Assembly: GCF_963921235.1 (NCBI RefSeq)
Contig: NC_086097.1
Location: 68,696,001 to 68,760,000 of the forward strand
Origin: Mobula hypostoma
Taxonomy: Eukaryota
Direction: 5' to 3'
Length of the DNA: 64,000 nucleotides
Shown: positions 5,221 to 62,989 of the stretch, in pieces
Layout of the letters: every line of letters starts with the position of its first letter
Position numbering within the stretch: position 1 is the stretch's first letter
Notes under the pieces: generated by a model
Told to the model about the DNA's origin: nothing
The model's input: only the letters and a program-made list of their open reading frames with translations
Databases searched by the model: none
Translations under genes and position numbers: made by a program

Positions 5221-5654
5221 ATATATATCTTGTGCAACTTAAGATGTATGGGACAAATGCTTCTTTGAAAATTTACTTCATTTCTAAATTTTCCCTGTTC
5301 TATTGAACAACCAGAAAAATTGAAATCTGAAATATCTATCTCTCTCCACAGATACTGCCTGGCTTACTAAGTATTCTAACAAATTCTATTTTAAAATTTT
5401 GTAAGGTTTTTAAAGCAGTTAAGTAATATGTTACATTACAAACAGAAAAAACTGGAAATGTTGGCACTGCTCTATTAGATCAATGGAACTACACGTTTTT
5501 TAATCCTAAAATCAACACAATGGACCACAGCACTTCTTTCTGTGCTTTTGAGAGGTGGAACTCATGGGCACTGCATAATATGGGGTGGCTAACATTTAAG
5601 CTAACTACATTTTACTGTGTTAAGGCAAGTTACAAGAAACACTATTTCATTAGA

Positions 5655-19712: not shown

Positions 19713-21459
19713 AAAAGTTTGGTGGCTATCACCGTACCAACCACTAACTTATCTGTTCTGACAGTGGCTCCTTTCTCTCCTTGTGGGCAACTGCAAGGTT
19801 GATGACCGCGATAAACAGATATGTTTTGCGCATCAAAACAATAATTCAGATGGCGGTATGCTTTGTTCCCCGAGGGAAATGAAACACACTTTCAGTAAAA
19901 GTACTCAAATCTCTGAAACTCTAAACGGCTTTCAGTCTTTAACTAAGCATTTACTAGGCTTTAGTTTAACACTCCGTTAATTTTGAGAGAAAAACGTGCT
20001 TCTATTTTTCAACACATTGTGTTTATGTGTAACGTAATAATGATTAGTCGGTATCGGTTATTTATCGAGTCTTCTTTAGGACTTGCATTAAAACAGTCGA
20101 AAAGATGCAAATATGCCAATCCGTGCAAAAAAAAGAGATGGGTAATCTGTGCCACTAGAAACAAGATATTTTGATTATTCCATAATGTTAGTACAAGAAA
20201 ATGAAATTATACGTCCGTAAATATAATTGTTGATCTTTTGTCATCCGTTTAATCCATATGAATGTTATGTGTCTGAAAATATATTAGCACACTGGCAGAC
20301 CGAAGGCAGACGAACGTTCAATAGGTTGGAGACCCCAGGCGAATAGGAAATAACGGTGTGTTTGCAGCATTAAAATTAATGACATTTTGGTTTGAGCTCC
20401 CGCAAGAATTGAAAGTAACGAAACACCCTGAATGATCGGTTACGGACGATGCACATGAAAGCATGCACCCTATAAACTTTTATTTCATTAATTTCTGTAT
20501 TTTAAATCATTGTAAATTATCTTGGCGTTTTGACTAGATCTCCCAAAGCTTTGAATTTGTCTGGATTCGCAATAAAAGATGGGCTGACGATACGTATAGC
20601 GAGCGCAACACTGCAGGCTGCGAAAGTGCAAGAGCTTCGTCAAATCAGAATTTAAAATCTTAATTCAATTATTATCAGTGATTTGTAGCAGGAATTTTGT
20701 TCCATTAAGTAATGCAAGTATTTTGTTCTTTATTGAGGGAAGATTTAGCTAATATAGAATGGCACTCACTAATATAAGTAGAAAATGGAGTGTGGACATT
20801 CGATCTGGAAGTTTGTAAGCCTCCGTTTTTTTTTACCATCTGCTACAGAAGTTCCCAAGAGCAGATTTTGCTGCCCTTGCAGTATGAGAAGAGAAAATTA
20901 AGGATCTTTAGCTCCATGGCAGCCTATATAGGGGATCAATCAGGCAAATTTGCTTCATCCGTCAGTTCATTTATTGATTTTCTCCAAACTTCTGCATATG
21001 TTGATACCGTTTATTTATATATAATTGACTTTATATAGGACGAATCCGTCCTCATTTTTGACTGTCAACGGAAGAGCTACTTGCAATCAGCATCTGTGTA
21101 ATTCCTCTCATTAGTGTCGTGTTTACGTATTTACTGCTTTGTAGTAACTCGCAGATCGTAATCAGGTCGTCCCGTTTTGATGCAACATGATGATACTTAT
21201 TATGTGCACAGGATCCAAAATGGCACACCCTAAAACCAATTAATGGTGACTACTTCCCATTTGACCTTGAGGAGAAGTGAGGATATCAATGTTGCAAGGC
21301 TATAATTTTGTTGCGGTATTGCATTCGGTACACAAACTGGCGAAGAACATCACCTACAGATAAAAAGAAACTGCAATCATAAATTGAAATAAGAAAATAT
21401 AATTTCCTATTATGTAGCATCTGGAGTTGAGAGTCTGTGGCCTTATTAATGTATGAAGC

Positions 21460-21590
21460 CACAAAAAACTACAGATTCTGGAATCTGGAGGAACAATCAA
21501 CCCGATGCAAGAACTCAATAGGTTGAGTAGTATCTGTGGGAGGAAAGGTATTGTGGGTGTTTTAGATTGAAGCCCATCATTAGAGGAGAA
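21460..21590 (-). mobile_element. Decayed Penelope terminal-repeat unit
   Basis: CTACAGATTCTGGAATCTGGAG...GAACTCAATAGGTTGAGTAGTATCTGTGG is similar to the copies at 57375 and 62860. Confidence 0.55.
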
Positions 21591-21699
21591 AAACTTTAAA
21601 AACGGCCTACTTCGAAGATAGTTCACAATGGAGTAGTACAATAAAAGGTCTAAAGAAGGTTTAGGTGGAAAACGCCCACACTCCTTTCCTCCCATAGAT

Positions 21700-34475: not shown

Positions 34476-36413
34476 GAATTTAAATTCCTTGTTGACTATG
34501 ATGAAGTTTGCAGCTGGAGAATTTAACTCAGATAAATAAATAAATAGTACTTAGAGTTAATGCATAGAAATTCAAAAATATGTGCAGTATTAATATTATA
34601 CAGGTGCATGAAATACCTCAGCAAAATACTTCCCCATTTGGTATTTGAGTATCAATATTACTAGTAGAAGGAACAAGATAAAGTTTTGCATAGAACGCAA
34701 AACACCAGGAATTAATTGAAGTTATTGTAAAAACGAAATAATTAAAAAACTTAGAGATGGTTTAGGAGGGGGATGATATTCTACATAGATTTAATATCAA
34801 TCATGTTGATGCATAATTATTGATACCTGCATGCAGTTTTTAAGCTCCATTCAGTTGCAAGTATTTTCTTTGGCTTAAAAGCACCTAAACATTTGGTTAT
34901 CAAAACAGATTTTCAAGATCATCTTAACAAAGGTAAAAGCATACTTGAAGATTTCTGGTGAGGATCCACATTATTAGCTGTTTTCAATATAAAGTCACAT
35001 CTGGAGCTAACTTAGTTTTGACATCCACTTTCAACAGATCATTGTACAAATGTTTTCTGTGTGTTTCAGTGAAACAAGGGCATTTACAAAAAGATGATTT
35101 AGAAAAGAGCGCTGATGCTCACATGGAAAAATTAGGATGAAAACTCAGATTATATTACTAATAAAATAGACTAAACATTTTTCTATAAATAGTAACAAAT
35201 TAAAGCTTTCATAGATGTGTTGGGAAAGTACAGTTTGCAATTAAGAACAATTCTTAAGCACCTTTAGATAGGATTATGATGTATCTCCAAGCTTGATAAT
35301 TCAAATTATTGGACATCCTTCTAGAAAAAAACAATAATTCAGTCTTTTGCACCCTGGACAACAGTGACGTAATCTGGATAACAATTAGGTCTTAGAGGAC
35401 AGGTGCAGAGGCTGCTCCCTAAAATACTTCCAATGTGCATAGGTATCATAAATGGATGGCGGGCTTGATGGGATGAACTGATCTTTTCCTCTCTATTACT
35501 GTGAGTGAAGGTGGGGACTAAGTGTAGTGCTGGCTTATTACCAAGAGATACATATGATAGCCATTCTACATCTCCATTTTCTCAATAAACTGTATCTTTC
35601 AGGCTTGCATCCTGCTACAATTTACTGCTCTGGAGATCAACCTTCCTAGAAGCATGTGTGTCAAGACAGATTCAGTCAAATGATTTACTTTGGAAATAAG
35701 AAGAGGATAATATTGGTGGCATTGCCATACATTACACTTATGACATTTATAGGGAATTCTGGCTCCTTCTGTCCCCACTGAATAATTTCACACATTTTGA
35801 TTGCTTCCTTGTCACTGCCTGGTTAAACTAGGCAAAAGGAGACTACGTGGATCTCCTACCTCTCTTTCTAAAAATATTGTTAAAACGTCCTGATATACAT
35901 ACAATAAGTTCACTGAGCCAATTAACATGTTGGGTATGTAGTTCCTGTACTGTTGTAGTTTAATGCAGATTATAAACAAACATGCATTGCTTCTTGCAAA
36001 TGATTTTAACATCCACTAACAATTCTTCTGTGCCAGATGGCAAAAGGGAAAATTGTTCTCTTTGTCCTGGGTCATTGAGCCAGAGGTCAGACATATTAAT
36101 CACCAAAAAGACAGATAAGTGAAATTTCCAACATTAATTCAAGTGACTTGTCAGTTATTTGAAATGAATTGAAAACTCATAAATAAAGATCTGCTTTAAA
36201 TGGTTATGTTTAATTCTGTCTCCACTAAAATTGCACACTTTCAGGATGTGCTGATTTCAAAACCAGATATTCATGAAATTTTGCAAATGGCTTGGGAATA
36301 AATAAAATAGATTTTTTTAATCTATCCATTTCAAATAGAATATAGTTTCAGTCATTATACAGTAGATTGAGATACAGTAAAATTATACAGTATTAATGTA
36401 GCAAATAACCTAC

Positions 36414-39400
36414 CTCTTTTTGAGACAAATTAAACATCCCATCACAATAATTTTCTTTCCTGTAAAGGATTTCTTTGACTTTGCAATCTGCACCTTGGTT
36501 ATCTTCCTTAATAGCATGACCATTTTGTGAAACATTTGTTTTGGTGCTAGGAGACAAATTGTCTTTTGGTTTCTCAAAATTAATGTCATTTGATTGTACC
36601 TCCACCACTGGATTAATTTTCATACCATGGGACCAATTTCCAGAAATATTTTCATAATTTTCTCTGTTCAATAGAAGTTTACTGGCCTCAACCATTTCAG
36701 CATTTGACATAACAGAGAAGGGCTCATTTTCTGATGAATATTTTGTTCTGTTTCTTTGTGCTGTAGGAAGCAAAGAATTAAGGTAAGGATTTTGAACATC
36801 ACATTCCAATGATTTGTTATCTTCTGGTGGGTTATTTGTTTGATTAATGGGAACAAAGCATGTATCTTGATCCTTAATAACTTTCTTTGTTTCACTCAGA
36901 TTTCTATCACATGTGTTTTGGTCAAATGGTGCCCCATTAATAGTGTTTGATACCACAATGTCTAGTTCATCATTTAACAATGGTAATTCATCCGGAATAG
37001 GGTCCTTTTGTAATGCAGAATCAAATAGGAAGGATTTATCGGATTGTTCTTCATGTAGAAAGTTCTCATCTTCACCATTGTTTTCCAATCTAGCCTCTTC
37101 ACTTAAATCTAACAGTAATGGTGTACTGCTTTTCTCATCTATGCAAGTGTTTACTTCACCACAGTCACTGTCATGTGATGATATGGACAAATAGGAGTAA
37201 AAGTCTCCTTTTCGAAGCTGCAAAGCTCGGTGAGAGTGTTTCAATACTTTTTCCTTGATCTGGGCCACTGATGTTGGACTCACCATTTCAGAGTCCTGCT
37301 GAGATATATTCTTCAGGGCAGAAGATGCCATATCAATTATTTCCTTCACAAAATTATGAACTGAACTATCTTCTTCCCCATCACTATGAGGAATATTAGA
37401 GTGGCACGTACAGTTTGAAATATCTTTTGCACAATCAATGTTAACTTCCTCCAACTCTCTGTTTCCTGAAATATGATGAGATGAAGATACAGCTGAATCT
37501 TTTTTGGCAGTATCTTTATCACCATGGCAGTTAAACATCAATTCTGCATGAGAATCTCGATGTCGTTGTTTTCCCTCATATTCACCAATGGCAGATTTAT
37601 CCCCATCTAATACTTCAACATCAGGAAATGTTTCAAGACTTTTCTTGTAAGTAGGCTCCCCATCAATGTTAAAAGTAGGTGATATTCCATTGTCTTCAAA
37701 ATATATAAGCTTTTTATCCTTCTTTTCGGATTGTGTCATGTTCTGGGGAACAGAAATCTGTTGTGATTCTGTTTTTTGTTCAAATGGTTTATTAAATAAT
37801 TCAGATTTCAAACATTCTGTTGTATGGGTTTTGCTAGTATTTTGCCCCTTTTCAAAGGAATTATGTTTTTTGCCGTCTAACATTCTTAGTTCTTTTTCAT
37901 CTTTTAGTGAAGATTTTTCCACATTGCCATTCTCTACATCATCTTTTAACTGGTGACTAGAGTGTCTGCGAGCTTCTGTTTCAGTCTGCAAGAAATGTCT
38001 TTCTTTTGGATGGAGCAAATTGCTTTTACATTCTTTAAACTCGGGCTGCTTTGATAATGAACTGTTTAAAAATGGATGAAGTGTGGAAGAATTTTTGAAA
38101 GCAGGTAACCTGATACTATTTGGGTCTGCCTTGCAACGATCTCTTTCTCCTGTGTTCAATTTTGGATTCAATTTTTTCTTTCCTTTCTGGGGGACAGAAA
38201 AGATTGGTTTAATCCAGTGGTGGAATTCGTTCTTCATGTAGTCTCTATCTAAAAGACGATTGTTTTCTTCATTAATGTCATCATCAGTAGCAATACTGGA
38301 ATCATCATCATCTTTAATGCACAGTTCCTCTTCAGTTAGTGTAAGGGTTGAACTGGAAAGTAAATCACTATCGTCTTCTTCATCAGTACAAGCAGAAGTA
38401 CAAGATACATTTACAATCATGCTGATATTGGTATCAGCTTCATCAGTTACTGAGTGATTAACACGCTTTTTGAATGATACATTGGAATCCAGAATTCTGT
38501 TTTTATGCACAATTATGTCCTCTGAGCATAAGGAGAGATCATCGCTGCTGCTTAGCTCTGTGAGAGAAGCAGCAGAATCTTCATTTGCTGATGATGCGGC
38601 ATCAAATGATTGCTGTCCAATGAATGACATTTTAAGAGAGTTGCTCTGCAGTGTAATATCAGAAACACTACGTTTTAGTTTTGGACTAATTGGATTCTGG
38701 ATGTTTTCTAAACGTTTCAAAAGGTCCAGTGTTCTCTTGCTTAACTCCCCCACTGCATCACTACTGATACTAATATCCCCTGAACCTTGGAGGCTAAATA
38801 GCTCCTCTGTGATTTTGCAGGGATTACCCCAGCTGTCTAAGGAAGTACTGCGATGGAGATCACCATTTTTGTGATTGTTAGTTCCATGCCTAAATATGTC
38901 ACCAGCAATTGAAAGAGACTCCACAGATGACCTCTGAGACAAAAATGTGAGATCTGTTTCATTTATATCTGGAGATACTCCATTGTCATCTATTTCACTA
39001 GGACCATTTTCAAGGTTAACTCTACTTGATGATGCTGGTAGGCATTTTTCTGATGTAGCCAAGTCTAGTGTACCATCTGGAGATGAGAGTCCGTTTTTAC
39101 AAATAATTTCAACTGGTTTTGGGCTCACATTTCCATTAGGAGTTTCCTTTCTTTCAGTTGTGTGACTTATGCTTAACTCAAGCTCAGGGCCCTGTAGGTA
39201 GGAATAGTCATAAAATGTGAACACATCATATTGTGCCTCCAGATCATTTGAAAAATCCTTTGAACTAATTTTATTCAGATGAAATGGCTGTAGATTATCC
39301 TCATTACTCAGACACTGTGATTGAATTTTTTTTGACAATTCTGTTTCACTTTTTGTTCTTTGTGTTTCTGCTATATTCTTTACTTCATTCTTTCCAAACG

Positions 39401-40052
39401 AGTCTTGCCTTTTACAAATGCATGATTGAATCGGACAATCTTTATGTTTCAGTTCTATTAGGGGGTGCAGAGATTTGCTAGATAGCTTAGTTTGTACTTG
39501 ATCATCATGGTTTGACAGAGAAGTTGTTTCTGCATCACCTTCACTAACTATTCCACTCTCACTCTCATGCCTCAGTGCTAATGGATTGTCCTCTTTTACT
39601 GGAATCAAATCACCCAGTAAGTCTGGCAAAGAATCATCAGAGGAGAAAGAAGAATCTTTACTTGCGCTCCTTCGTAAATTGGTTAAAAGCTTTGCATTGG
39701 AGAAATTTGGTGCATTATTGAAGTATGATGAAGAATCTCTTCCAGGCAGCTGTAGATTATTTAAGCTGTGGTGCTGATGGGAATATGGACAAGAGGAAAA
39801 AGATGGTTCACCAGGACTGTATAGTGATTCTCCAGGCCCACTGCTATAGTGGTCCAACATAAGTTCATCAATGAGATTATTCATAGGTTCAGGTGAAAAT
39901 TTTGATACATCATTCTGCTTGCATGCAAGATCAAGTGTTTCATCTTGGATACCAATCAAATTGTTACTCATGTCTGTTTCATCCCATTCCAGTGAATCTT
40001 CGCCTGAAATATTTAAGTCCATCAGGCCAGGTTCAATACAGCTTAAGGAGAC
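36414..40052 (-). CDS. AKAP6: AKAP6 (mAKAP) giant C-terminal exon, 3639 nt, phase 0-0
   Basis: 1209-aa ORF with AKAP6 motifs LEWDE, HESESGIVSEGD, SKRTLDLLKRLENIQ, KRSVSDITLQS, DDDSSIATDD and the RII-binding helix VHNFVKEIIDMASSALK; acceptor TTTTGTTATCTTCTAG|GTC and donor GAG|GTAGGT. Read-through stop at 36393 if unspliced. Confidence 0.95.
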
Positions 40053-40157
40053 CTAGAAGATAACAAAAATATTTTTAAGTGTTAGTTTTGTTTTAATGAG
40101 CATTGATAAATTAATGAGTAGCATTTTAAACAATATTGAACAAGAAGGCTGTCTGAA

Positions 40158-40252
40158 CAACGCACACAGAGCACTGGAGAAACTCAGCAGGCCAGGCAGC
40201 ATTTAGGAAAAGAGTACAGTCAACATTTCAGGCTGAGACCCTTCAGCAGGAC
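40158..40252 (-). mobile_element. Solo Penelope terminal-repeat unit with a mutated hammerhead
   Basis: Minus strand reads GTC-CTGCTGA-AGGGTCTCAGCCT-GAAA-TG-TT-GACTG; flanked by CTGTCTGAA and CTATCTGAA. Confidence 0.75.
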
Positions 40253-42269
40253 CTATCTGAAGTGGGATTCTTCAGAGCCTAGTACTGTGTTCCTCGTGTT
40301 TTATGATCTATATCAATGATTTAAGGATATAGGGGAAAATTCTAGGTGATACAAAAATTGACTCAAGCATAGACTAAGAATAGGGAAATCAGTCTAGAAT
40401 TTCCTAACACACTAGTATACACTGCACACTTTATTACAATGATATGGTAGAAAGTTTAGATAAGGTTTATGGGCAAATTTATTTCGTTATGGGAAAGCAT
40501 CATCTAGACTGCCATCACTTTCCTCAAATCAGAGGAGGCTAAGGAGAAGTTCAATTGACATCCTGAAAAATATCAGAAGGTACAGAGGAAGGGCTTATTT
40601 CTTTCTGCAGTGAGGTTATTTATGGGGATGAAATATCTGAAACTTACTGTATACATTTATACAGTAAATGTATAATCAAGGCTGAAATCCTTATCACATA
40701 TTTAGAAATATCTGGATGCGCATCCAGATTCCAGACATGAAAGTTAGAGAGTAGAATCAATCAATCTCAATACCGCTTTGTTGGATAGCATGTTGCATAA
40801 ATTTCTGTAAAAGACTAAATAATACACTTGATTTGCCCATAACTGCATGATATTAAGTAATGTGACTTCTCTATATTTTACATAAGACTCGATGGATATA
40901 GTTTCATCAATATATAGGGGGATTGCAAATTCACTGTCATAATTGGGCAAGTTGCGGTTCGTGCGGATACTGTAGTTATTCAATATCATCAAAGTTTGGA
41001 ATATTTTTATTTTTGGGCCTCAGTCAGAGTTAGGGGGTGTGCAGGCTATCTGTTTACTTTGGTGTTTGGCATCCTGCCCATTTGAAGGGGAGGAATTCCC
41101 CGCAAGCCCTTGAAGACTATTTAAAATATGAAGTCACACACCCATCGGTTTTACTGAAAGCAATAAAATACAGAAGTCGGAAGCTAACCAAGAAGTTTTA
41201 AGCAATTCCATGATTTCTTATCGAAGTTACTATAAGAAAGGATGTTAGCCTAGAAATGAGATTGGATGGGGCTATTCAAGTATAAATGTACGCATCATGA
41301 AGTGAAATGCCATTTCTTGGTTTTAATGCATCTCTTTGGGAATTCAATTTGGCACTTTCTATCATGAGTCACGTTTGCATGTCTGATGTGCATCAATTGT
41401 TCTTCCTTTGTTGTTGGTGAAATCAATATGTATTGTCCTAGCAGTTACCCTTGTTTGATGCTGTCTGGTCAACCAAGGCTTTGCTCCAATAAAAGTAAGT
41501 CCGACCCCACTGAGCTCCCACTCAGCCAATCTAGCAATTGACTGCCTGATCCCTGAGGTTCCCAATGGAAGCCCATATCCAACATGGTCCCAGACTCTTA
41601 CTTCATTTTTGATTTTCCCTCTACCCTCTAAGTCCCTGATGCTGGCTGCCTACTCAATGCTTTACCTGTTCATTGATTTTACTATATCCCATCCTATCTA
41701 CCCTAATTTTGAAAGCCATCCTTCTCTGCAGGCCCCAACACTGATCACTGGTTGAAAACCACCATACTTGTGGCTCCACTATTAATTGCTTAGTAGATCA
41801 AAAGACTAACCATTTGCAGCACTGTGACTCTCAATGTCCTGGAGATATCTCTGTCTAGGTTGTCCCCCAAAGTAGAACAATCCATAAGCAACAAGTAAGC
41901 TTCAAGCCATGGATCTTGATGGTGCATCCCCAAGCTGTCTTGGTGCCTTGATGCTGTATCCAGCAGCACATCAGAAGTGCTACCATTTGAGCTTCAGCTC
42001 ATCAGGGTGGAGGTTCCAATGGTCCTGCCCATTATTTCCATTTCATTGCATCCCATTTAGTAATAACTATTTCTCTATTTCTAGCTCTCAGAGCACTTTT
42101 ATCCCCTGCACACATCCATCTTATTCTGATCATGCAGTCCTGCACTTCTACAATAGCCATGGGTAGTTTTCAGTTCTTACCTGATTGCAAGATAGCAATA
42201 GGAGTAAGCTATTTATATTCTCTAATCTAGTCCACAAGTTAAAGTACAAAATTGGCAAAAGACCAAATA

Positions 42270-47749: not shown

Positions 47750-50700
47750 GCTGGGACTTGTATATCAAGAGGGTTGAACTGTATTGTAGCACAAACAACG
47801 TGGAAGAGAAAAGGAGGCATCCACATTTCTTAGCTTTAGTCTCTTATGCAATCTACTAACCCCTGAAAAGCTAGCAAGCAAGACATTTGACAAATTTGTT
47901 ACAATTTTACAAAAGCACTTGAGCAATAAACTGCTGGCAATAGCTGAGAGATTTAGATTTTACAAAAGGAATCAGTCAAAAGATGAAAGCATTTCTGAAT
48001 ACATTGCAGAACTGTGCAAACTTTCCCAGTACTATGATTTTCTGATCAAAGCACTCAAAGGCTATTATCTGAAAGAGACCTAACATTAGAATGGACATTG
48101 ACCATTGTAATATCATTAGAGACTGCAGCAGAACTACAGAAAAGGAGGTTAGAATGTGAAGTGCACAAAATGTTCTGAATAGTGCAAAAAGCCAAAGATG
48201 TTATTGATGTGGCAAATCCTCCCATGATGCATGTAACTGTTGGTTGGAAGAAAAAGTCTGCAGAAAGTGTCATAGACAAGGTTACATAGAGAGAATGTGC
48301 AAGGCAGACAAAAACCACAACCAAGTGAAAAATCTCAAACACAAAACTAAGCAAGTGCATAAAATTACTGAATGTAAAACAGAGTCAAACAACACAATCT
48401 GACAAAGGTGAACTGTCATGCCTAGAACTGCATAGTACAACTGAAGCAGGTCACAAAATCATCATGATCACAATAGATGTGTGGTGTAAAAACTGAAAAT
48501 GGAGTTGGATACAGGGTCAGCTTTGTCCATAATTCCAGAGGATGACTATAACAGACTGTTTTCTAAGATACCATTAGAGAAGACCTCAGTGATGCTAAAG
48601 ACTTAGATTAGTGAAAATGTGTTTCCCAAACGCAAACTAAAAGTAAATGTGACATATGGAAGCCAAACACAACGGTTAGAGTTTTACATATTGAAAAGTG
48701 GAGGGCCAGCATTTTTTGGACATGAATGGTTATGAAAAATCCAACTAGACTGGCACTCAATCAAAGTTCTCAGTGTGATATCAACAGGCAACAGCAGCCC
48801 AAATGGTAGCACTAACCAGAGACTGGCACACCTGCTTAATGTTTATGAGAAGGTGTTTGAGAGGGTATTGGTAAACTCAAAGGCGTGAAGGTCAGAATTG
48901 AACTGGATGAAACAGCAACACCAAGATTCCATAAAGGACATCCAGTGTCTTACACACTTTGTCCTAAAGAGGATGCTGAACTGCAGAGCTTGGAGGTGTC
49001 TGGAATTTTCTCCAAGGTTGGGTGGAGTGAATGGGGCACGCTGTTGTCCTGCTTGATCAAGGAAGGGAAGGCTGGAGCTATTTGCATATGTGGGAATTTC
49101 AAGGTGAGCATCAACCCGATGCTGCGTACTGTGCAGTATCCCCTGTCATGAATAGAAGACATTTTTGCATCTTTGGCAGGCGGTGAGAGGTTTTCACAGA
49201 TTGGCTTATCAGAAGCCTATCTGCAAATGGGGATTGAGGAGTCAAGTGAGGAGTTCCTCACGGTCAACATTCATAAGGGACTGTTCCAGTATAGTCGTTT
49301 CATCTTTGACACCGCATCAGCTCCTACAATTTGGCAAAAAGCCATGGACAAAGTGCTCCAAGATATCACTGAAAACAATGTGACCTTGATGACATCATCA
49401 TGATGGGCAAAAATGATGAAGAGCCCCTTCAGAACCTTTGTAAAGTGCTTACCAGGCTGAGTGAGTATGGTCTGTGTGCAAAGAGAGAAAATGTGTTTTT
49501 CATGAATGAAATCTCATATTGTGGACATGTCATTGACAAACATGGCTTACATAAGTCACAAGAGAAGATTGAAGCAGTGCTGCAGGCACCCAAACCAGAA
49601 AATGTGTCACAACTCAGGTCATACTTCCCCTTGTAAACTACAACCACCAGTTTCTCCCAAACATTGCTACAGTGCTGCATCCTTTGAATGAACTGTTGCA
49701 AACAGGAGCAAAATGGGAATGGTCAGAAAGAGGTGAAAGAGCATTCAAGGAAACAGAGACTAATAACATCAGATGAACTGCTCACCCATAATAACCCATC
49801 CCTGCTCATCAGACTGGCGTGCGATACGTCCCTTTACAGGACATCTCTGGAGCTGTTTTGTCACACATTATGAAAGATGGATCTGAATGCCCAATTGCGT
49901 TTGCTTGAAAATCACTGATGAGCACAGAACACAACTACACACAGGTTGACCGAGACCCTTAGTCTAGTATGGGGAATAAAGAGGTTCCACCATTACTTCT
50001 ATGGACAAAAATTTATGCTAGTGACAGTTCACAAGCCCCTTGTGTCCATTTCAATCCCAGAAAGGAAATTCCAGTGATGACTGCTACCAAGTTACAATGT
50101 TAGGGTTTATTCATAGGAGCCCACTCTTATGACATAAAGTTCAAGGGTACCATGCAACACAGCAACTCTGGTGGCTTGTCACATCTTCCACTATTGGCAA
50201 ATGAAGAAGAAATGTCTTCATACTGTGACCTAGCCGAAGTGTTCCACACCGTATTGGTGGACCAGTTTCCGGTAACAAATTCTAAAATACTAAGGGAAAC
50301 AAGGAATGACCCGACATTGTCTAAAGTCTATGAAATCACCATGCAAGGAGGGCCAGCTTATGGTGGCCCTATGTTTCCAGAGTTCTCAGCAAGACGAGAC
50401 CAACTGTCGGTATGTCAAAGAACCCTGATTTGTGGATCTCGTGTTGTGGTTCCATCTAAACTGTGCACTGGAGTGTTAGAAAATCTGCTGAAGGACACTT
50501 GGGTACAGACAAGATGAAGAGGCTCACAGGGAGTTATGTATGGTGACCGGGAATAGTTAAGTAGATTGAAGACTTGGCCAAAAGCTGTTCAGACTGCTAA
50601 AAAAGTTCAAAATGCACCCCCATATGCACCATTACACTTGAGGAAGTGGCCATCATCACCATGGCAAAGACTACATATTAACTAAGCTGGGCCATTCATG

Positions 50701-52210
50701 GACTCCATGTTCCTGATTGCTGTGGATGCTCATTCAAAATGGCCAGAGGTTATACCAATAAAGTCAATCACGTCAGCAAAGACTATCTCCGCTCTGAGCA
50801 TTATCTTTGCCGGAAACGGCATACCAGAACAAATTGTGAGTGACAATGGACCATGATACACGCCAGAAGAATTCCAACTGTTCATGAAAAAAAAATGGCA
50901 TCAGACATTCCAAGTCAGCTCCTCACTGCCCAGCAATGAATGGGTGAGTTGAAAGGTTTATCCAAGCCTTCAAGAAGTCCATTAAAATGATGGACAAGGA
51001 GTATATTTCTTTAATACAAGGTGGACAACTTCCTTTTTGTGTATCAGAACTCTGTTAATGTGATGACAAATCAAACACCTGTAATGTTGTTCATGAGCAG
51101 GAATCTGAGATCTTGCATAGACTTCCTGAAACCAGACCTCTGGAGGGAAGTGCAGAATAAACAGTTCAGCCAATTGCCAGTGAAGCAGCAAGGAGCTTCG
51201 AGATTGGACAGGAAGTCCTCGTGCTTGATTATGGAGAAGACAGGTGGACACTCATTAGAATAGCTACAAGAACTGGACCACTGATGTACACAGTGGATGT
51301 TGGAAATCAGAAGTAAAGCAGAGGTTAAGTGTGTAATCTTGGAAAAACTCAACCAAATGTGGCAAGAAAGATGGGACAGGTAGGGGAAAGGAAGGCATTT
51401 ATATCAAATACAAAAAAGTGTTGTAGGTACTCGGGTAGGTAGAGGATACAGAAGAGAGGAAACTGTGTGGACTAGGTTAAGGCTGGGGCACTGTGCAAAA
51501 ACAAAACATTGAAAATAATAGGGAAATACCAGACAGGATTGTGTGAGGAATGTCAAGAAGAGGAGTCAGTAGAGCATGATTGAGTAAAGGGATTTAGAAT
51601 GTAAGTCTATTGCACACTCTGGAGCAGAAGGTGGCGGAAATACACCATTAAGCTGGGTGTCAACCGCCGTAAAACAAGACAAAGAAGAAGAAGGAAATCA
51701 GAAGTGGAGACATCATGTGGATGAGATACAGTACTGGATGCTGAACTGAAGAACAAACCTGAGTCGATTGCATCCAATAAAATGGACACATTACAGTCAC
51801 CAGATTACCTCTCAGTGATGATGTCACTGACAGCAATGTGACACCGGAAACGGAGAACTTTGTCTGATGCCACTCCACAGGTCCAAAGGCGCTATCCCGA
51901 AAGAAACAGAGCACCACCCAGAAGAATGAACCTTTAGAACTAAGAAGTTAATTAATGGACTGTCATTGTGAAAGCATGTTTATTTGGAATATGGGTTCAT
52001 GAAAGGGAAATTAAATGTGTGGTACATGTACAGTTTTATGTTCCATTAATCTAAAGGGGGAGGAAGTGTAATGTATGGATCTATTTCACTACATATTGAT
52101 CTGTTATCTACGCATATGCATTGTTCTCTCTCTCTCTCATAGCAATGTGAATACACCAGTTAAAGCCATCTCCCACGTGTGTGCTTTTACTTAGTTGCAC
52201 AGACACAACA
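47750..52210 (+). mobile_element. Decayed Gypsy LTR retrotransposon (gag-pol, 3' LTR; no 5' LTR seen)
   Basis: gag ERFRFYKRNQSKDESISEYIAEL and zinc knuckle; protease ELDTGSALSII near 48500; RT ICGNFKVSIN, EISYCGHVID; RNase H LACDTS; integrase VSDNGP; PPT AAAGGGGGAGGAAG, then TG...CA LTR at 52067-52210. Confidence 0.92.
51315..51692 (+). mobile_element. 5'-truncated Nimb/I-clade LINE nested in the Gypsy
   Basis: Perfect 13-bp TSD GGAAATCAGAAGT (51302-51314, 51693-51705); peptide WQERWD..GKGRHLYQIQ..TRLRLGH..LCEECQEEESVEH; (GAA)n tail. Confidence 0.85.
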
Positions 52211-53099
52211 ATCATCAAACTTAGATATGCAGTATAACAGCTACATCAAAAATAGTTCTGTCCCAGGCACTGGGCCTTGTAAGATTCCACTTTTTACAAA
52301 CTGCCATCCTAAAATGATCTTTTAATTCCTATTCTCTGTTTCCTGTCCATTAACCAAGCTTCAATCCATGCAAATATACTATGCTCAAACCTCCTCTGTG
52401 GCATTGTTGAATTTCTTCTGATAATCTATAAACTGGTACTTTCTTATTTAGACTTCCAGCTACTTCTTTGAAACACTCTAACATAGTGTATTTGTCAAAT
52501 ACATTTCACTTCCTTACAACCTGAAAATAATTAACTCTGTCTAACTATATTACAATTTTTAACATATGCTGACACTGTGGTTGTAATAATGGATTTAGCA
52601 TTTCACCAGTGATAATGTCTGCCTTACTGTTTTGTTTTTCCCTCATTTAATGGACAATTGATTTACATTTGCTATCTTGGAATTCCCTTGTACCATTTCC
52701 AAATCTTGGGAATTTTGGAATTTCTGAAAAATTATCAACACTAACTTTGAAGCTACCTCTTTTAATATCTTGAGAGTTAAGCTATCTGGTCCTGGATGTT
52801 CATGAGACTTTGGTTCCACTAATATTTTCTTTGATAATTTTAATCAATTTGAAATTCCTCAATCTCATAACTTGATGAATCTCTTTTCATCTTTGTTATT
52901 CCATATTATAATTGCTCAATATGCATATACTGTGGATTATGATTAATTGGAACACATAGGGACCATTACATTTTGGCCCAGTTAAGCAGCTGCCCCAATT
53001 AGCCGAGGTTTCATGGAAATAGTTTAAAAATATATTAAAAAAGGCAAAATACCTTTTAACTGAGTAACAAATTATACATACAGAACAAACTAGAACACA

Positions 53100-53565
53100 A
53101 CTGGTGGTTGTCCGTTGTATCCAATGGTGACCAGAAACCTGTGGGGGGAAGGTTTCTGAAGTGGAAAAGCCGTTGCTCTGGAGTAGTTCCACTCTCTCGA
53201 CATTGGAAGTCCGGGTCCAGTGGGATGAGTAGACATCAAAACTGGGGTCTTCCATGATTGCAGTGGATGACCATTACTCCTTCTGTGCCTCAGCATGCTA
53301 TTTGTTCTCCATTTAGTGTTGCAGAACCGTCTTCCAGGCCATTAGATCTCACTGTAGACCTCATCTGCCCAGTCTGCTAGAGTTGACTTCACATACTGTA
53401 CTAGGACAGGCCTATCCCTGTCTCACCGAGGTATGAGACCCACTAGCTACCCTCATCTGATTTAGCTTGTCTGTCGAAGCAGCGTATTGATGTGTGGCTG
53501 CTGTCACATGCAAACAGCTTTCTGGAACCACAGTTGAGAACTGAATGTCTGGTGGGGACCAAAGG
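53100..53565. mobile_element. RTE-related non-coding retroelement fragment
   Basis: GC-richer block inside the Tigger element; CTACCCTCATCTGATTTAGC..GTCGAAGC..CCACAGTTGAGAACTGA..GGGGACCAAAGG resembles recalled RTE UTR-derived elements. Confidence 0.45.
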
Positions 53566-53654
53566 TAACATTCAAGATAATTGTCGATGCTTTCAAATTC
53601 TTCCTAGTTCCTAACTTGTTGAAGTAGTGAACTTTGCATCTTCCTCCTCCTTTC

Positions 53655-53692
53655 CAGTTCTGAAGAAGGGTCTTGGCCTGAAACGTCAACTG
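53655..53692 (+). ncRNA. Minimal type-I hammerhead ribozyme within a Penelope terminal repeat (about 53632-53755)
   Basis: CAGTT-CTGAAGA-AGGGTCTTGGCCT-GAAA-CG-TC-AACTG: stem I CAGUU/AACUG, core CUGANGA and GAAA, GUC cleavage triplet (cut after 53687). Confidence 0.75.
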
Positions 53693-55861
53693 TTTGTTCA
53701 TTTCCATGGATGCTCCCTGGCCTGTAGATTTCCTCCAGCATTTTATGTATGTTTCATCATTTCACTTGCACTCCTGCCCATTTCTGGCACTTCTAAGTCT
53801 GAATGCTTGAAACTGCAGTGAGCATCACAGTTCAGAATTGTCTTACTGCTTATTTCTCGCCAACTATCAGTGACAAAAATCACTGCTTTTTCAACACATA
53901 CACACAACTGATGCTATTAAAAAAAAATTTGTTCTAAGCAAAGTGCAGTCTCTAATGGCCACAAATGTGCACACAACTGATGCTAGTTAGAAAATGTTCG
54001 ACAACAATCTTCTGCCCCAATTAAGTGGCACGTCCCAAATAAACAAAGGGAATCTCGGCTATTTTCATGATTACTTTTTGTTCTTTCAGAGTTGTCCCAA
54101 GTAAGTGACCCAATTAACCGATGGCCAAATTAACTAGAATCCACTGTATTTATTGGATGTTTCCTAAGTTACTAATGATCTATTACTATTTTAAATTTCT
54201 GTTGTTCATAATTTGATTTCATCAAATGTGCTACTCCAGTTATTTAACTTGCTTCTTCAAGTTTATTAATTTATCCCTATCTGGACATTTCTTCACCAGG
54301 ATAAGTATGCTGTCTAATCCACATAGTAGTTACTTTAGTTTTTAGTAGTACTTTACAAAATTTCTATATGTGATGGTATCCTACAGACAGCTTCCTGTTG
54401 ACTGCATGTTTGTTATAGTACTTAGGGTCTTTCAGTCTGAACATCCTTGTATTAAAAAAAAACCTCCAGGGTGAGTGACACTGTACAGCCAAAGATGGAG
54501 AGACAGCAGCTTCCATCACATTGAACAGGAGATGATGAGAAAGATTGCAGGATCTTGTCAGTCAACAAAAGGCACAAATGCTGCCAATCCTAAACAAATG
54601 TCTTCACTCGACAGGCCAGGGAACTGCCCAGAGAACCATATCTCAGCTCTGAGCAGCTGCACCCAGTGCTGTCAGTAATAAATCTTGATACATATAATAC
54701 TATAACGACCACTTTTGGCACTAATTCTGTTAGCACTCTTGTTCCTGAGAACACAGCCTGAGGGCTAAATAATGCTAATAAAACATTAACCAAACACAAA
54801 TTAACACTTTATCCAACCTTTGTCTGATTACATAGAAATGTTTAAGACACATCATACAATTATAATTCTTCAATCTTTTTAAAAGAACTGCAAAATATCT
54901 TTTTGGAAAGCTATTTTCTTTCTGCTTTTCTATATTTTGCTCCATTCATACACTTCAACAAAAATGTATAAAATAAGAAACATGGAAGACAGCATTATGG
55001 AATACTTATTACATGAACAATTATAGAAGAGAAATAATTGTAGACAACACATGGGACAGAATGAAACACAACCAATGAATTAGCTATTAACCTGTCCTTA
55101 TAATTATATAAAAGAACAAATTTGTATTGACATAACAATAAAATTTGGAATCCTTAAATGTGCTTGTTAATGAATTTCTTTCATGTATTAATAAATTATC
55201 TGGCTATGGGCTCAACATTTATCCAACTCACACATGACATTTCACACCTCATAAAATGAGAATTTATCACATATTTTATATGGATTCAATAAAGCAGTGA
55301 TAGGTTGGTTTACAATTACATTATATGGTTTAATCATAGCATTTATATTTTAACCAACTTCAACCAATAGTTTTTTTTTTCTGGACCTTCCACGGTGTTC
55401 CAATTTGGAAGTTGTAAACTGATTAGCATTTGAAATTTTGATAGGTAGCCGGTTCACAATCATACCTGTACTTGCAAAAGATTGACTCAATAGACATCAG
55501 ATAAATACACCAGCTAACACTTTCTCTCTGGTAATATTGAGATAGAGAATGAATCACCATCAAGAGGACTCAGATTTGAAAATCTACTTAATCTGGCCAA
55601 ATACCTAAACTCACTCCTGTTCTAGTCTTGCAGTTGAACTAACCTTTTGTGATTGTATGGATCATAACATTCTTGAAGTTGTTAGTGGTTGAATGTCAAT
55701 TTAATTCAGGAGTTGTAAATATAGCAGCCAGCTAATACAAACAAAATGTCTTTAATCTAGGACAAAGATAGATGCTTGAATGAACATCATTTTCTGAAGA
55801 TACAGCCATCTCTCAATGCAGTCCTCAAAGAAAATGCAAAGGACTAGAGATGTTTGAACCG

Positions 55862-55985
55862 GAACAACGCACAAAGCTCAGGAGGAATTCAGTGGGTCAA
55901 GCAGCATCTATGGAGGGAAATGGACAGTTTACATTTTGGGTTGAGACAATCAATGATGCTACCTGACCTGGGTGAGTTCCTCCAA
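55862..55985. mobile_element. Penelope terminal repeat with an inverted tail (fold-back)
   Basis: GAGGAATTCAGTGGGTCAAGCAGCATC ... GATGCTACCTGACCTGGGTGAGTTCCTCC is an imperfect inverted pair. Confidence 0.6.
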
Positions 55986-56269
55986 TACCTCATCCACCAA
56001 TCCTAAAAGAAGACACTCTTGATTGCCTAGATTCCAAACAAAAGTGTCTGAATTTTTTGAGTTGCCATTGTCTGTTGGGATGAGCTCCCACCATCAAAAT
56101 ACAATTCTGCACATCTACTTATCTACACTCAAAATAGTGAAATAAACTATGTAATTATAAATATTAAAGCTGCAGTTAATCACCCATTGTTTCTTTGTGT
56201 TCAAAATGTATAAAACCTCTCTGTACTTTGAATTCTATGAGATTCTTCCGAGATCATTCCAGAAGATTC

Positions 56270-56858
56270 TTAGAACATACAACTTAGAACAGTACAGCAC
56301 AGGAACAGGCCCTATAGTCCACAATGCTGTGCCAAACTAATTAAATTAGTAATCAAATGATCAACTAAACTAATCTCAGTATCTTTCCATTTCCTACTCA
56401 TCATGTGTTTATTCAAGAGCTCCTTGAATGCCCGATCACATTTGCCTCCACTACCACACCTACAGTGCATCTCAGGCACCCACCACAATCTGTGTAAAAA
56501 AAACTTGCCCCTCACATCTCCTTTGAACTTGCCCTCTGGTCTTAGATATTTCAAGCTTGAGAAAAAAGATACTCCATTTACGCCCCTCATAGTCATAGAA
56601 ACTTCTGTCAGATCTTCCCTCAGTCTCTGACGATCCAGAGAAAACAACCCAAGTTTATCCAACTTTTCCTTATAGCATATGCCTTCTAATCCAGGCAGTA
56701 TTCTGATAAACCTCTTCAAAGCTTTGACATCCTTCCTATCACAAAGCTACCAGAAACAAATGCACTAATTCAGATGCAGCCTAACTAGAGATTTTATAAA
56801 GTTGCAGAGTAATTTCACACTACTTGAACTCAATTCCTTGACTAATAAAGACAAGCAT
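56270..56858 (-). mobile_element. CR1 3' end
   Basis: ORF KRFIRILPGLEG..LGLFSLDRQRLREDL; tail near 56275. Confidence 0.85.
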
Positions 56859-56859
56859 T

Positions 56860-57365
56860 GAAGGAACCATGGTTGACAAGAGTTGTGGAACATCTAGTGA
56901 AGAGGAAGGAAAAAAGCCTACGTAAGGTTTAGGAAGTAGGGATCAGATGTGTCTCTTGAGAGTTACAAAGTAGCCAGGAAGGGGGAACTGGAGAGATCTA
57001 GAAGGGGACAGGGGAAGGCCTTGGTGAATAGGATTAAGGAAAATCCCAAGGCATTGTACATGTACATGCAGAACAGGAGGATGAATAAAGTGAGGGTAAG
57101 ACAATTAAGGATATAAAAGGAAATGTGCCTGGATTCAGAGGAGGTCCTCAATGAATACTTTTCTTTAGTACACACCAGTGAGAGGTACCTTGATGAATGT
57201 AAGGGCAGTGTAGGGCAGGCTAGTATGTTTAATGTCACTGGAGGTCACATGGGATAGATTGCTACTCGAAGTGAGGGAAGAGATTGCTGCAAATTCGACA
57301 ATGATCTTTGCATTCCCACTGGCTACAGGAATAGTACCAGAAGACAGGAGAATGGCAAATGTTTT
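56860..57365 (+). mobile_element. CR1 internal ORF2 fragment, opposite orientation to its left neighbour
   Basis: Aligns by eye with 1127-1712 ([31 protein letters not shown]). Confidence 0.85.
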
Positions 57366-57369
57366 TAAA

Positions 57370-57680
57370 AACACAAGAAAATCTGCAGATGCTGGAAATC
57401 CAAAGCAACACGCACAAGATGCTGGAGGAACTCAGCAGGCCAGGCAGCATCTATGGAAAAGAGTAAACAGCTGATGTTTCAGGCTGAGACCTTTCATCAG
57501 GACTGGAATGGAAGGGGGAAGACGCCAGACTAAGAAGGTGGAGGAGGGGAGGAAGAAGCACAAGGTGCCAGGTGATAAGTGAAACTGGGAGAGGGGGAAG
57601 GGTGAAGTAAAGAGCTGGGAAGTTGATTGGTGAAAGAGATAAAGAGATGGAGAAGGGGGAATTTGATAGGAGAGGACATC
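57370..57680 (-). mobile_element. Penelope 3' region and terminal repeat with a decayed hammerhead
   Basis: Minus strand: polypyrimidine tract, then CAGTC-CTGATGA-AAGGTCTCAGCCT-GAAA-CA-TC-AGCTG, then the CCAGCATCTGCAGA tail. Confidence 0.8.
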
Positions 57681-57681
57681 T

Positions 57682-58330: not shown

Positions 58331-58546
58331 TTGTCTATGATGTGTATTTTTAACTGCATTACCCCATAGTTAGATCTGTTTGGGCCAACAATCGTGAATG
58401 TAAAAATAAGAACAGGCCAAAGATTAGAGACAATAAATCAACAGAGATATTTTGTTGATTGAGAAAAATGGGGAAAATATTAGATTTGCTTCTAAATAGA
58501 AACATAAATGTAAAATGAAATGAGCATTGCCAGTAATGCTCGTTTA

Positions 58547-62853: not shown

Positions 62854-62989
62854 TCACAGATAAGAGAAAATCTGCAGATGCTGGAAATCCAGGCAAAACA
62901 CACAAAATGCTGGAGGAACTCAGCAGGCTGGAGAGCATCTATGGAAAAAAGTATAGTCGACATTTCAGGCTGAGACCCTTCATCAGGCA
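62854..62989 (-). mobile_element. Solo Penelope terminal-repeat unit with hammerhead core
   Basis: Minus strand C-CTGATGA-AGGGTCTCAGCCT-GAAA-TG-TC-GAC; flanked by the direct repeat GACTTTATGTCAG (62841-62853, 62990-63002). Confidence 0.8.

What the first reader, a model, noticed from the sequence alone, without database searches (positions are those of the whole stretch)
53655..53692. Apparently intact minimal hammerhead ribozyme in a Penelope terminal repeat
Seen: CAGUU-CUGAAGA-AGGGUCUUGGCCU-GAAA-CG-UC-AACUG has every conserved hammerhead core base, a 5-bp stem I, a stem II, and the AC-GU mini stem III. Sister copies have a C-G pair at the base of stem I (5' arm CAGUC at 57500, 3' arm GACUG at 40217), whereas this copy has U-A, a compensatory-looking change. 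Established: Penelope-like elements carry minimal type-I hammerheads that cleave mainly as dimers. Inference: this genome hosts a high-copy self-cleaving RNA family. This copy is antisense to the AKAP6 pre-mRNA. The three readable sense-strand copies all carry mutations in the core, stem I or stem III, possibly reflecting selection against cutting the pre-mRNA, though CpG decay also explains them.
Basis: partly seen in the sequence, partly recalled or inferred. Interest (0 to 1): 0.75.

Follow-up and report, generated by a model that had tools for sequence, protein, structure and literature searches.

The report
Solo Penelope-type hammerhead motif, ray intron
The 38-base motif is really there and matches the stripped-down "hammerhead" self-cutting RNA motif that Penelope-like jumping genes are known to carry. 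This copy is a lone, old, 163-base retro-insertion on the antisense strand of an AKAP6 intron, with no partner motif to pair with, so it is most likely an inert relic of an already known kind.

Summary
Observation confirmed. Window 53655-53692 (+) has every conserved hammerhead core base, a 5-bp helix I, a 4-bp helix II and the ACGU mini helix III. It is the only intact motif in the window. Shuffled windows give 0.005 such motifs.

It lies in a 163-nt insertion (53632-53794) belonging to a repeat family with 7 copies in the window. The family is hugely abundant in this species and in three related ones. Its architecture fits published Penelope-like-element (PLE) min-hammerheads and PLE retrocopy geometry.

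The sense copies are all broken, also as said.

Not supported:
- The U-A "compensatory" pair is not separable from neutral decay. One side is a CpG transition, and copy B shows the one-sided state.
- Four sequences give no significant covariation.
- The selection idea rests on 1 copy versus 4, and two of the four were inserted already incomplete.
- No partner motif lies on the same strand.
- Helix II closes with G·U instead of the conserved G-C.
- Rfam models do not see the motif.
- No PLE gene lies in the window.
- No raw RNA reads were available, so cleavage is untested.

The scan had already noted this family in many other windows of this genome. Verdict: a new member of a known kind, of low interest.

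The parts
53632..53794 (+). Copy A: a 163-nt solo retrocopy nested in another high-copy repeat. It consists of 23 nt of upstream terminal-repeat sequence, the 38-nt hammerhead motif and a 102-nt tail.
   Evidence: Contigs of three related organisms join 53631 directly to 53795 (or 53799), which are empty-site paralogues of the host repeat (table 5). nhmmer places the family match at 53632-53788. An inverted-repeat match to copy B spans 53643-53753.
53655..53659 (+). Helix I, 5' arm (CAGUU). U53659 is position 2.1.
53660..53666 (+). Core box C3-A9 (CUGAAGA, N7 = A).
53667..53679 (+). Unpaired A, then the helix II hairpin: G·U, G-C, G-C, U·G with a CUUG loop.
   Evidence: (the MFE of the 38-mer forms it). 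The family consensus has G-C at the closing pair (loose ends at 57465).
53680..53686 (+). Core G12 A13 A14, then A15.1-C15.2-G16.2-U16.1. The palindrome ACGU (53683-53686) can form helix III only with a second copy.
   Evidence: The ACGU/ACGU duplex is worth only -1.7 kcal/mol.
53687..53687 (+). C17. The predicted cleavage is between C53687 and A53688.
   Evidence: Position follows from the standard hammerhead numbering applied. Cleavage was not tested.
53688..53692 (+). Helix I, 3' arm (AACUG). A53688 is position 1.1 and derives from G of a CpG.
   Evidence: (consensus GTCGACTG).
53693..53794 (+). Tail of the retrocopy, running to the shared 3' end of the family, 107 nt after the predicted cut site.
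   Evidence: The corresponding distance is 103-104 nt in copy B and 105 nt in copy C.
57369..57528 (-). Copy B (sense to AKAP6). It is the longest copy and has more upstream C/T-rich sequence. Its motif (57505-57468) is broken: helix III CG>CA, and 1.1 G>A leaves a C/A mismatch.
   Evidence: The 3' end at 57369 comes, table 7.
62854..62989 (-). Copy C (sense). It is a 136-nt insert flanked by a 13-nt target-site duplication (63002-62990 and 62853-62841). It starts at the core box, so it never had the 5' arm of helix I. Helix III is CG>TG.
40148..40266 (-). Copy D (sense), about 100-200 nt upstream of the AKAP6 large exon. The core has A6>C, helix III is CG>TG, and C17>U.
55826..55995 (-). Copy E (sense). 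It is decayed and has no CUGAUGA box. An inverted piece of the tail (55954-55988, +) abuts it, giving a fold-back form.
21458..21602 (-). Copy F, old and decayed, downstream of the last AKAP6 coding exon found.
5301..5377 (+). Copy G, an old decayed fragment.
36393..40049 (-). AKAP6 large coding exon. It fixes the gene's strand.
   Evidence: (243 hits, the named ones nearly all A-kinase anchor protein 6; best is Chiloscyllium, 61% identity).

Best explanation
Copy A is a dead-on-arrival, 5'-truncated retrocopy of the end region of a Penelope-like retrotransposon (PLE).

How the copies arise (inferred from literature). In PLEs the terminal repeat carries a minimal type-I hammerhead with no helix III hairpin. 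The reverse transcriptase starts copying at an internal site roughly 100 nt downstream of the hammerhead. It often stops early going upstream. The result is short copies that share a 3' end and differ at the 5' end.

What copy A is (shown). It is one such 163-nt copy. It landed inside another repeat in the large AKAP6 intron, on the antisense strand. By the luck of where its roughly 15-20% substitutions fell, it still spells a complete motif.

Whether it works (inferred). It very probably does not act as a ribozyme. This class needs a second copy to build helix III and, in the one element studied biochemically, the element's own protein. There is no second copy on its strand within the window. 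Its helix II closing pair has decayed to G·U. In its 163-nt context the hammerhead fold is not the favoured one. It would also need antisense transcription. It has no role for the host gene.
For: Motif and chance:
- The motif is real and unique in the window.
- Chance gives 0.005 per window.

Family:
- There are seven copies in the window with the motif in the same place.
- Summed contig depth over the family is 10^4-10^5 times the single-copy depth in three related organisms. The family is also present in a probable RNA run.
- The consensus from overhangs is a full motif with G10.1-C11.1 and four CpGs.

Retrocopy geometry:
- The 3' end lies 103-107 nt after the cut site in A, B and C.
- The 5' ends differ: 23 nt upstream in A, more than 150 nt in B, and at the core box in C.
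- Copy C has a 13-nt target duplication.
- Empty-site joints define copy A as a discrete insert.

Match to published features (PMC4209133): an extra nucleotide after A9, a short helix I, a palindromic 15.2/16.2, no helix III, and mostly solo copies.

Match to the anole element PAc (PMC11167929): reverse transcription starts 111-118 nt into the ORF and the cut site is 26 nt after the start codon, so about 85-92 nt apart. Cleavage there needs the protein.

Need for dimers: PMC4209133 and PMC6765202.

Inertness of this copy:
- There is no other copy on the + strand except the decayed G, 48 kb away.
- The ACGU duplex is worth -1.7 kcal/mol.
- Stem probabilities fall from 0.9 in the isolated 38-mer to 0.01-0.06 in the 163-nt element.
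- The motif is not better kept than the tail.
Against: - No PLE reverse transcriptase / GIY-YIG gene is in the window. The Penelope link therefore rests on architecture, literature and unverified earlier notes.
- A neutral model gives only 0.3-3% intact motifs at the divergence of copy A. An intact old copy is uncommon, although many are expected among 10^4-10^5 copies, and this one was picked because it is intact.
- If copy A comes from a diverged subfamily whose master had the U-A pair, part of its 'divergence' is inherited and the pair is true covariation. I could not test this.
- The hammerhead-constrained fold of the 163-nt element is only 1.7 kcal/mol above the MFE, so co-transcriptional folding is not excluded.
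- Family RNA seems abundant, so partners in trans cannot be ruled out.
Confidence: 0.8

Rival explanations
1. Copy A is a working self-cleaving ribozyme in vivo. Antisense transcripts through the intron would fold into the hammerhead and be cut after C53687, pairing through ACGU with other family transcripts in trans and perhaps helped by PLE protein.
For: All core positions are intact and helices I and II form in the isolated 38-mer. Family sequences appear in a probable RNA run at high summed depth. The constrained fold is only 1.7 kcal/mol above the MFE. The anole PLE hammerhead cleaves when its protein is present (PMC11167929).
Against: Single min-hammerheads showed no detectable cleavage, and dimers only low activity (PMC4209133). 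No partner lies on the same strand. The intermolecular helix III is worth -1.7 kcal/mol. The G10.1-C11.1 pair is lost. In anole RNA-seq no reads begin or end at the cut site (PMC11167929). Unique intronic bins around copy A are empty or nearly so in the probable RNA run.
Confidence: 0.07
2. The short units are a self-standing non-autonomous family, either monomers of non-LTR retrozymes or a SINE-like element headed by the ribozyme. They would not be mere truncated by-products of PLE copying.
For: Copies are short and numerous, and some start at the motif (copies C and D). Animal retrozymes are reported to derive from PLE terminal repeats, to leave many monomers, and to occur in the one chondrichthyan sampled (bioRxiv 10.64898/2026.07.22.740005).
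Against: There is no tandem head-to-tail array of the unit in the window. The 5' ends differ between copies while the 3' ends agree, which is the mark of 5' truncation. Copy C lacks the 5' arm of helix I, so it cannot have been a ribozyme-defined unit.
Confidence: 0.1
3. Sense-strand copies in AKAP6 lost their motifs because selection removes ribozymes that could cut the pre-mRNA, while the antisense copy escaped.
For: One of one antisense intronic copies is intact, against none of four sense copies. Several sense copies lie in one pre-mRNA and could in principle dimerise in cis. Retrozymes are reported to be depleted from introns in Xenopus (bioRxiv 10.64898/2026.07.22.740005).
Against: Five copies give no power (Fisher's exact test gives about 0.2 by my own arithmetic). 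C and E were inserted without a complete motif. The hits in B and D are mainly CpG transitions. The neutral model predicts at least 90% broken at a divergence of 0.06 or more. The cited preprint contains no strand or orientation analysis. Cleavage by this class is weak even as dimers (PMC4209133).
Confidence: 0.05
4. The match is a chance look-alike with no relation to hammerheads.
For: Rfam's hammerhead models give no hit, even at E up to 10 on a 58-nt stretch.
Against: Chance expectation is 0.005 per window. The same motif sits at the same place in the family's other copies and in the family consensus. The Rfam models expect a helix III hairpin, which this published class lacks by definition (PMC4209133).
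Confidence: 0.01

Closest known systems
Minimal hammerheads of metazoan Penelope-like elements (Cervera & de la Pena 2014, PMC4209133; Lunse, Weinberg & Breaker 2017, cited in PMC6765202)
   Same: It is type I with all core bases. One unpaired nucleotide follows A9. Helix I is short (5 bp). There is no helix III hairpin but a palindromic 15.2/16.2 (ACGU). Copies are found mostly solo, scattered and in huge numbers, and many are decayed.
   Different: Helix II has only 4 pairs, against 6-8 in the schistosome and fly examples. In this copy the closing pair is G·U instead of the conserved G-C. No flanking PLE gene is seen here. Cartilaginous fishes are not named in the papers I could read.
PAc, the Poseidon element of Anolis carolinensis (PMC11167929)
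   Same: The hammerhead lies at the junction of terminal repeat and ORF. Genomic copies end at an internal reverse-transcription start site about 85-92 nt beyond the cut site, against 103-107 nt here. Contig overhangs point to two preferred 3' ends 50 nt apart (57369 and 57419), which recalls PAc's two start sites and optional tail.
   Different: In PAc the ORF starts inside the motif. In the ray copies the ATG inside CUGAUGA runs into a stop after about 15-21 codons, and copy A has no ATG there at all. No protein or biochemical data exist for the ray element.
Non-LTR retrozymes of animals (Cervera & de la Pena 2020, PMC7229834; bioRxiv 10.64898/2026.07.22.740005)
   Same: They are short non-coding units with a type-I hammerhead, related to PLE terminal repeats, and have many monomer derivatives.
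   Different: Retrozymes are defined by tandem head-to-tail arrays that give two ribozymes per transcript. No array is present in this window.
Canonical type-I hammerhead (Rfam Hammerhead_1, RF00163) and conserved intronic hammerheads of amniotes
   Same: They share the catalytic core and the helix I / helix II arrangement.
   Different: This motif has no helix III hairpin, no loop-loop contacts and no Rfam hit. It is antisense to the host gene, part of a repeat, and shows no sign of conservation as a host element.

Membership tests
Hammerhead ribozyme (catalytic core) | C3 U4 G5 A6 N7 G8 A9, G12 A13 A14, A15.1-U16.1, and H17 (not G) | tested here: met
   CUGAAGA, GAAA, A15.1/U16.1, C17.
Hammerhead ribozyme (catalytic core) | Helices I and II flank the core and can form | tested here: met
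   The MFE of the 38-mer is exactly helix I (5 bp) plus helix II (4 bp) at -6.4 kcal/mol. In the 163-nt context the pair probabilities drop to 0.01-0.06.
Hammerhead ribozyme (catalytic core) | Site-specific self-cleavage after position 17 | not testable with these tools
   All 24 runs offered are kept as contigs, which cannot show RNA ends.
Rfam Hammerhead_1 / other Rfam hammerhead models | Score at or above the gathering threshold, with a helix III hairpin | tested here: not met
   There was no hit at gathering. There was none at E<=10 on 351 nt or on 58 nt.
PLE minimal hammerhead (PMC4209133) | An unpaired nucleotide between A9 and 10.1 | tested here: met
   A53667 (best helix II uses offset 1).
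PLE minimal hammerhead (PMC4209133) | A conserved G10.1-C11.1 pair | tested here: not met
   Copy A has G·U. The family consensus from contig overhangs has G-C. The loss is a CpG transition.
PLE minimal hammerhead (PMC4209133) | Palindromic 15.2/16.2 with no helix III hairpin | tested here: met
   ACGU at 53683-53686.
PLE minimal hammerhead (PMC4209133) | A second motif nearby on the same strand to allow the active dimer | tested here: not met
   The only other + strand copy is the decayed G at 5301-5377.
PLE minimal hammerhead (PMC4209133) | Family alignments rich in compensatory changes | tested here: inconclusive
   There are four sequences only. Two cells change on both sides, one of them in non-homologous flank, and 68 of 500 shuffles do as well.
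Penelope-like element | The repeat flanks an ORF with a telomerase-like RT and a GIY-YIG endonuclease | not testable with these tools
   There is no such ORF in the window. Pfam scans of 44 ORFs (every ORF of 70 aa or more in 40.3-64 kb, plus the longest elsewhere) found only a LINE (541-2744) and a gypsy-type remnant (47.9-51.3 kb). Pattern scans of metagenome and viral collections were empty. The rest of the genome was not on hand.
Penelope-like element | Retrocopies share an internal 3' end (tail) downstream of the hammerhead and vary at the 5' end | tested here: met
   The 3' ends lie 103-107 nt after the cut site in A, B and C, and the 5' ends differ. Compare PMC11167929.
Non-LTR retrozyme | A tandem head-to-tail array of units, each with a hammerhead | tested here: not met
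   No tandem arrangement of the unit was found.

The most novel reading that the evidence does not exclude
Minimal hammerheads from Penelope-type retrocopies lose catalytic competence faster on the sense strand of long introns than on the antisense strand. The reason would be that several sense copies in one pre-mRNA can pair through ACGU and cut the host transcript. The U-A pair of copy A would then be inherited covariation from an active subfamily rather than luck.
Probability: 0.05. Interest if true: 0.55.

Novelty: new member of a known kind. Interest (0 to 1): 0.15.

Why it matters
It matters little on its own. It is one more copy of a ribozyme motif that has been known since 2014 to ride on Penelope-like retrotransposons, and the scan had flagged the same family in many other windows of this genome.

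Two modest points go beyond that. First, ray genomes carry this family at very high copy number, shared among related species. That makes them good material for the still open question of whether these minimal hammerheads ever cut in vivo. Second, the geometry of the copies gives independent genomic support, from a distant vertebrate, for the internal-initiation model worked out on the anole element. The relevant features are a fixed 3' end about 105 nt past the cut site, ragged 5' ends, and possibly two preferred 3' ends.

Tried and rejected
- **Rfam cmscan.** I ran it at gathering threshold on the whole window, and at E<=10 on 351 nt and on 58 nt. No hammerhead model responded. I read this as a limit of the models, which expect a helix III hairpin, and not as evidence against the motif.
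- **RNA evidence.** The look-up of sequencing runs offered only runs stored as contigs. Read laying therefore could not show read starts or ends (table 6: none).
- **Orthologous contigs.** Contigs of three related organisms break at the repeats. None bridges copy A, so I could not date the insert or see the state of the U-A pair in other species (table 8).
- **Pattern scans.** Scans for the tail and for the motif in metagenome contigs and viral contigs found nothing, so no outside locus could link the repeat to a PLE gene.
- **Pfam scans.** Scans of 44 ORFs found no PLE gene. A weak RT hit at 49173-49403 turned out to belong to a gypsy-type element with zinc knuckle, RNase H and integrase remnants.
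- **ESM Atlas.** A look-up of the 1209-aa ORF gave only low-score leads. The word-based protein search then named it AKAP6.
- **RNAcofold.** It cannot represent the hammerhead dimer, because helix III between two closed helix I domains is a crossing interaction. I scored the 4-bp helix alone instead.
- **Host repeat.** A search for an uninterrupted copy of the host repeat inside the window found none.
- **Lunse et al. 2017.** The paper is not held in the library. I used the review that summarises it.

Full report
**What is there**

In standard hammerhead numbering it breaks down as follows:
- helix I 5' arm CAGUU
- core C3-A9 as CUGAAGA
- one extra A
- a helix II hairpin (GGGU / CUUG / GCCU)
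- G12 A13 A14 A15.1
- C15.2 G16.2 U16.1
- C17
- helix I 3' arm AACUG

The predicted cut is between C53687 and A53688.

I wrote a descriptor that asks for the core boxes, helix I of at least 4 bp, helix II of at least 3 bp, a palindromic insert between A15.1 and U16.1, and H17. It finds exactly one hit on both strands of the window, and it is this one. Of 400 dinucleotide-preserving shuffles of the window, two gave any hit. None gave a hit with helix I of 5 bp and helix II of 4 bp.

Rfam gives nothing. There was no match at gathering thresholds over the window. No hammerhead model appeared at E up to 10 on 351 nt or on 58 nt. This says more about the models than about the motif. The published class lacks the helix III hairpin that the models expect, and it was originally found with a purpose-built descriptor (PMC4209133).

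**The family**

Pattern searches, alignment and an nhmmer profile find seven copies in the window.

| Copy | Coordinates | Strand |
|---|---|---|
| A | 53632-53794 | + |
| G | 5301-5377 | + |
| B | 57369-57528 and beyond | - |
| C | 62854-62989 | - |
| D | 40148-40266 | - |
| E | 55826-55995 | - |
| F | 21458-21602 | - |

Only copy A is intact. The others fail as follows:
- B has helix III CG>CA, and G1.1>A leaves a C/A mismatch at the base of helix I.
- C has CG>TG and starts at the core box, so it never had the 5' arm.
- D has A6>C and CG>TG.
- E lacks the CUGAUGA box and carries an inverted piece of tail in its place.
- F and G are old wrecks.

**Abundance and consensus**

All sequencing runs on offer were stored as contigs. 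I laid contigs of three related organisms and one probable RNA run on 52000-57999 at 90% likeness.

Summed contig depth over copy B is about 10^5 times the single-copy depth of the neighbouring unique intron in each DNA run. Over copy A it is about 10^4 times. The tool warns that this is not a copy number, so I take it only as 'very abundant, and shared by related species'.

Contig overhangs at 57465 give a family consensus, read on the ribozyme strand, of GGGTCTCGGCCC-GAAA-CGTC-GACTG. The master motif therefore has the canonical G10.1-C11.1 pair and four CpGs.

Measured against it, copy A has:
- a loop change CG>TG
- C11.1>U (CG>TG), which turns the closing pair into G·U
- G1.1>A (CG>CA)
- the non-CpG change C2.1>U
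- N7 U>A

**Boundaries**

Several contigs in all three organisms join 53631 directly to 53795 or 53799 (table 5). These are copies of a host repeat without the insert. Copy A is therefore a discrete 163-nt insertion nested in another repeat. It has 23 nt upstream of the motif and 102 nt of tail.

The distance from the cut site to the 3' end is 107 nt in A, 103-104 nt in B and 105 nt in C. The 5' ends differ widely, and C has a 13-nt target-site duplication. Overhang counts also point to a second, less used family end at 57419, 50 nt short of the main one (table 7).

**What it is**

These features are those of Penelope-like elements.

PMC4209133 describes minimal type-I hammerheads in their terminal repeats. 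They have a nucleotide between A9 and 10.1, a short helix I, palindromic 15.2/16.2 and no helix III. They are mostly scattered as single motifs, thought to derive from truncated elements. Single motifs did not cleave, and dimers cleaved weakly.

PMC11167929 studied the anole Poseidon element and shows several things:
- Reverse transcription starts at two adjacent internal sites 111-118 nt into the ORF.
- The cut site lies 26 nt after the start codon, so genomic copies end about 85-92 nt past the cut site.
- The hammerhead cleaves only with the element's protein.
- Ribozyme-dead mutants still insert.
- No RNA-seq reads begin or end at the cut site.

The ray copies fit this geometry. I could not test the last link, the presence of an RT plus GIY-YIG gene between two such repeats:
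- Pfam scans of 44 ORFs in the window found only a LINE at 541-2744 and a gypsy-type remnant at 47.9-51.3 kb.
- Pattern scans of the metagenome and viral collections were empty.

Earlier follow-up notes of this scan on other windows of the same genome reached the same classification. I treat them as leads only.

**Host gene**

The 1209-aa ORF at 36393-40022 (-) is the large exon of AKAP6. It gave 243 hits with E of 1e-10 or better, and nearly all the named ones are A-kinase anchor protein 6. The best is from Chiloscyllium at 61% identity.

tblastn with that protein places further exons at 29555-29400, 27759-27631 and 27036-26911, all on the minus strand. It finds no credible exon for residues 1-827 in 40050-64000. 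By inference, copy A lies in the intron before the large exon, antisense. B, C, D and E are sense.

**Is the U-A pair compensatory?**

It is a change on both sides relative to the family's C-G. One side is a CpG transition, and copy B shows exactly the one-sided intermediate (C/A).

I ran a neutral simulation with transitions twice as frequent as transversions and CpG transitions ten-fold faster. Among copies that have G1.1>A, 6-13% also have C2.1>U at divergences of 0.10-0.20.

Pair counting on the four alignable motifs gives two both-sided cells, one of them in non-homologous flank. 68 of 500 shuffles do as well.

Copy A's motif differs from the majority of B, C and D at 6 of 34 positions, and its tail at 14 of 65. 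The motif has therefore not been kept better than the tail.

The simulation gives 0.3-3% intact motifs at that age. That is uncommon per copy but yields many among tens of thousands, and this copy was chosen because it is intact. The open alternative is that copy A descends from a subfamily whose master already had U-A. That needs the whole genome to test.

**Is it likely to cut?**

- The isolated 38-mer folds into helices I and II (-6.4 kcal/mol).
- Within the 163-nt element the probabilities of those pairs fall to 0.01 and 0.06, and within 340 nt they fall lower still. The constrained fold is nevertheless only 1.7 kcal/mol above the optimum.
- Helix III must come from a second copy, and the ACGU/ACGU duplex is worth -1.7 kcal/mol.
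- The only other + strand copy is the decayed G, 48 kb away.
- Unique intronic bins next to copy A are empty or nearly so in the probable RNA run.

I put the chance that this copy cleaves in vivo to any meaningful extent at under one in ten.

**The selection idea**

One antisense intact copy against four sense broken copies has no statistical weight. C and E were incomplete when inserted. The disabling hits of B and D are mostly CpG transitions. The neutral model predicts that at least nine in ten copies of moderate age are broken.

The 2026 preprint that reports depletion of retrozymes from Xenopus introns contains no strand or orientation analysis. The idea is not refuted, but nothing here supports it.

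**Verdict**

This is a correct identification of a known kind of motif in a lone, old retrocopy. The interpretive extras (compensation, selection, activity) are unsupported. It is a new member of a known kind and of low interest.

Noticed in passing
window 27481-27651 (-), within ORF 27834-27481: The ORF ends in a KASH-type nuclear-envelope domain (Pfam PF10541, E 2.9e-8). It has a transmembrane stretch and a luminal tail ending in GPPPF followed by a stop. It sits between AKAP6 exon matches at 27759-27631 and 27036-26911, so ray AKAP6 may have an alternative C-terminus with its own KASH anchor.
   Followed up: partly
window 40148-40266 (-): Copy D of the hammerhead repeat lies on the sense strand only about 100-200 nt upstream of the 3' splice site region of the AKAP6 large exon.
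   Followed up: no
window 55826-55995: Copy E is a fold-back. An inverted piece of the family's tail (55954-55988, +) abuts the decayed motif where the CUGAUGA box should be.
   Followed up: partly
window 57369 and 57419 (copy B): Contig overhangs in all four runs pile up at two places 50 nt apart at the 3' side of the family (about 840 and 270 contigs in run X5). This suggests two preferred 3' ends, like the two reverse-transcription start sites of the anole element (table 7; PMC11167929).
   Followed up: partly
window 47900-51300 (+): This is a decayed Ty3/gypsy-type retrotransposon, with a CCHC zinc knuckle and RT, RNase H and integrase remnants in shifting frames.
   Followed up: partly
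window 541-2744 (+); 56915-57222 (+): A LINE with endonuclease and reverse transcriptase domains lies at 541-2744. A 78-79% similar fragment of its 5' part lies next to copy B.
   Followed up: no
window 10375-10855; 57729-59138: A fold-back element with 208-nt arms 95% complementary lies at 10375-10855. A cluster of nested, rearranged copies of the same family lies just upstream of copy B.
   Followed up: no
window 62262-62363 (+): Three tandem copies of a 34-nt unit, two of them identical.
   Followed up: no
copies B and C, core box CUGAUGA: The ATG inside the core box is where the anole element's ORF starts (PMC11167929). In the ray copies that frame stops after about 15-21 codons. A second ATG about 20 nt after the cut site stays open to the end of the retrocopy. 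I read this by eye.
   Followed up: no
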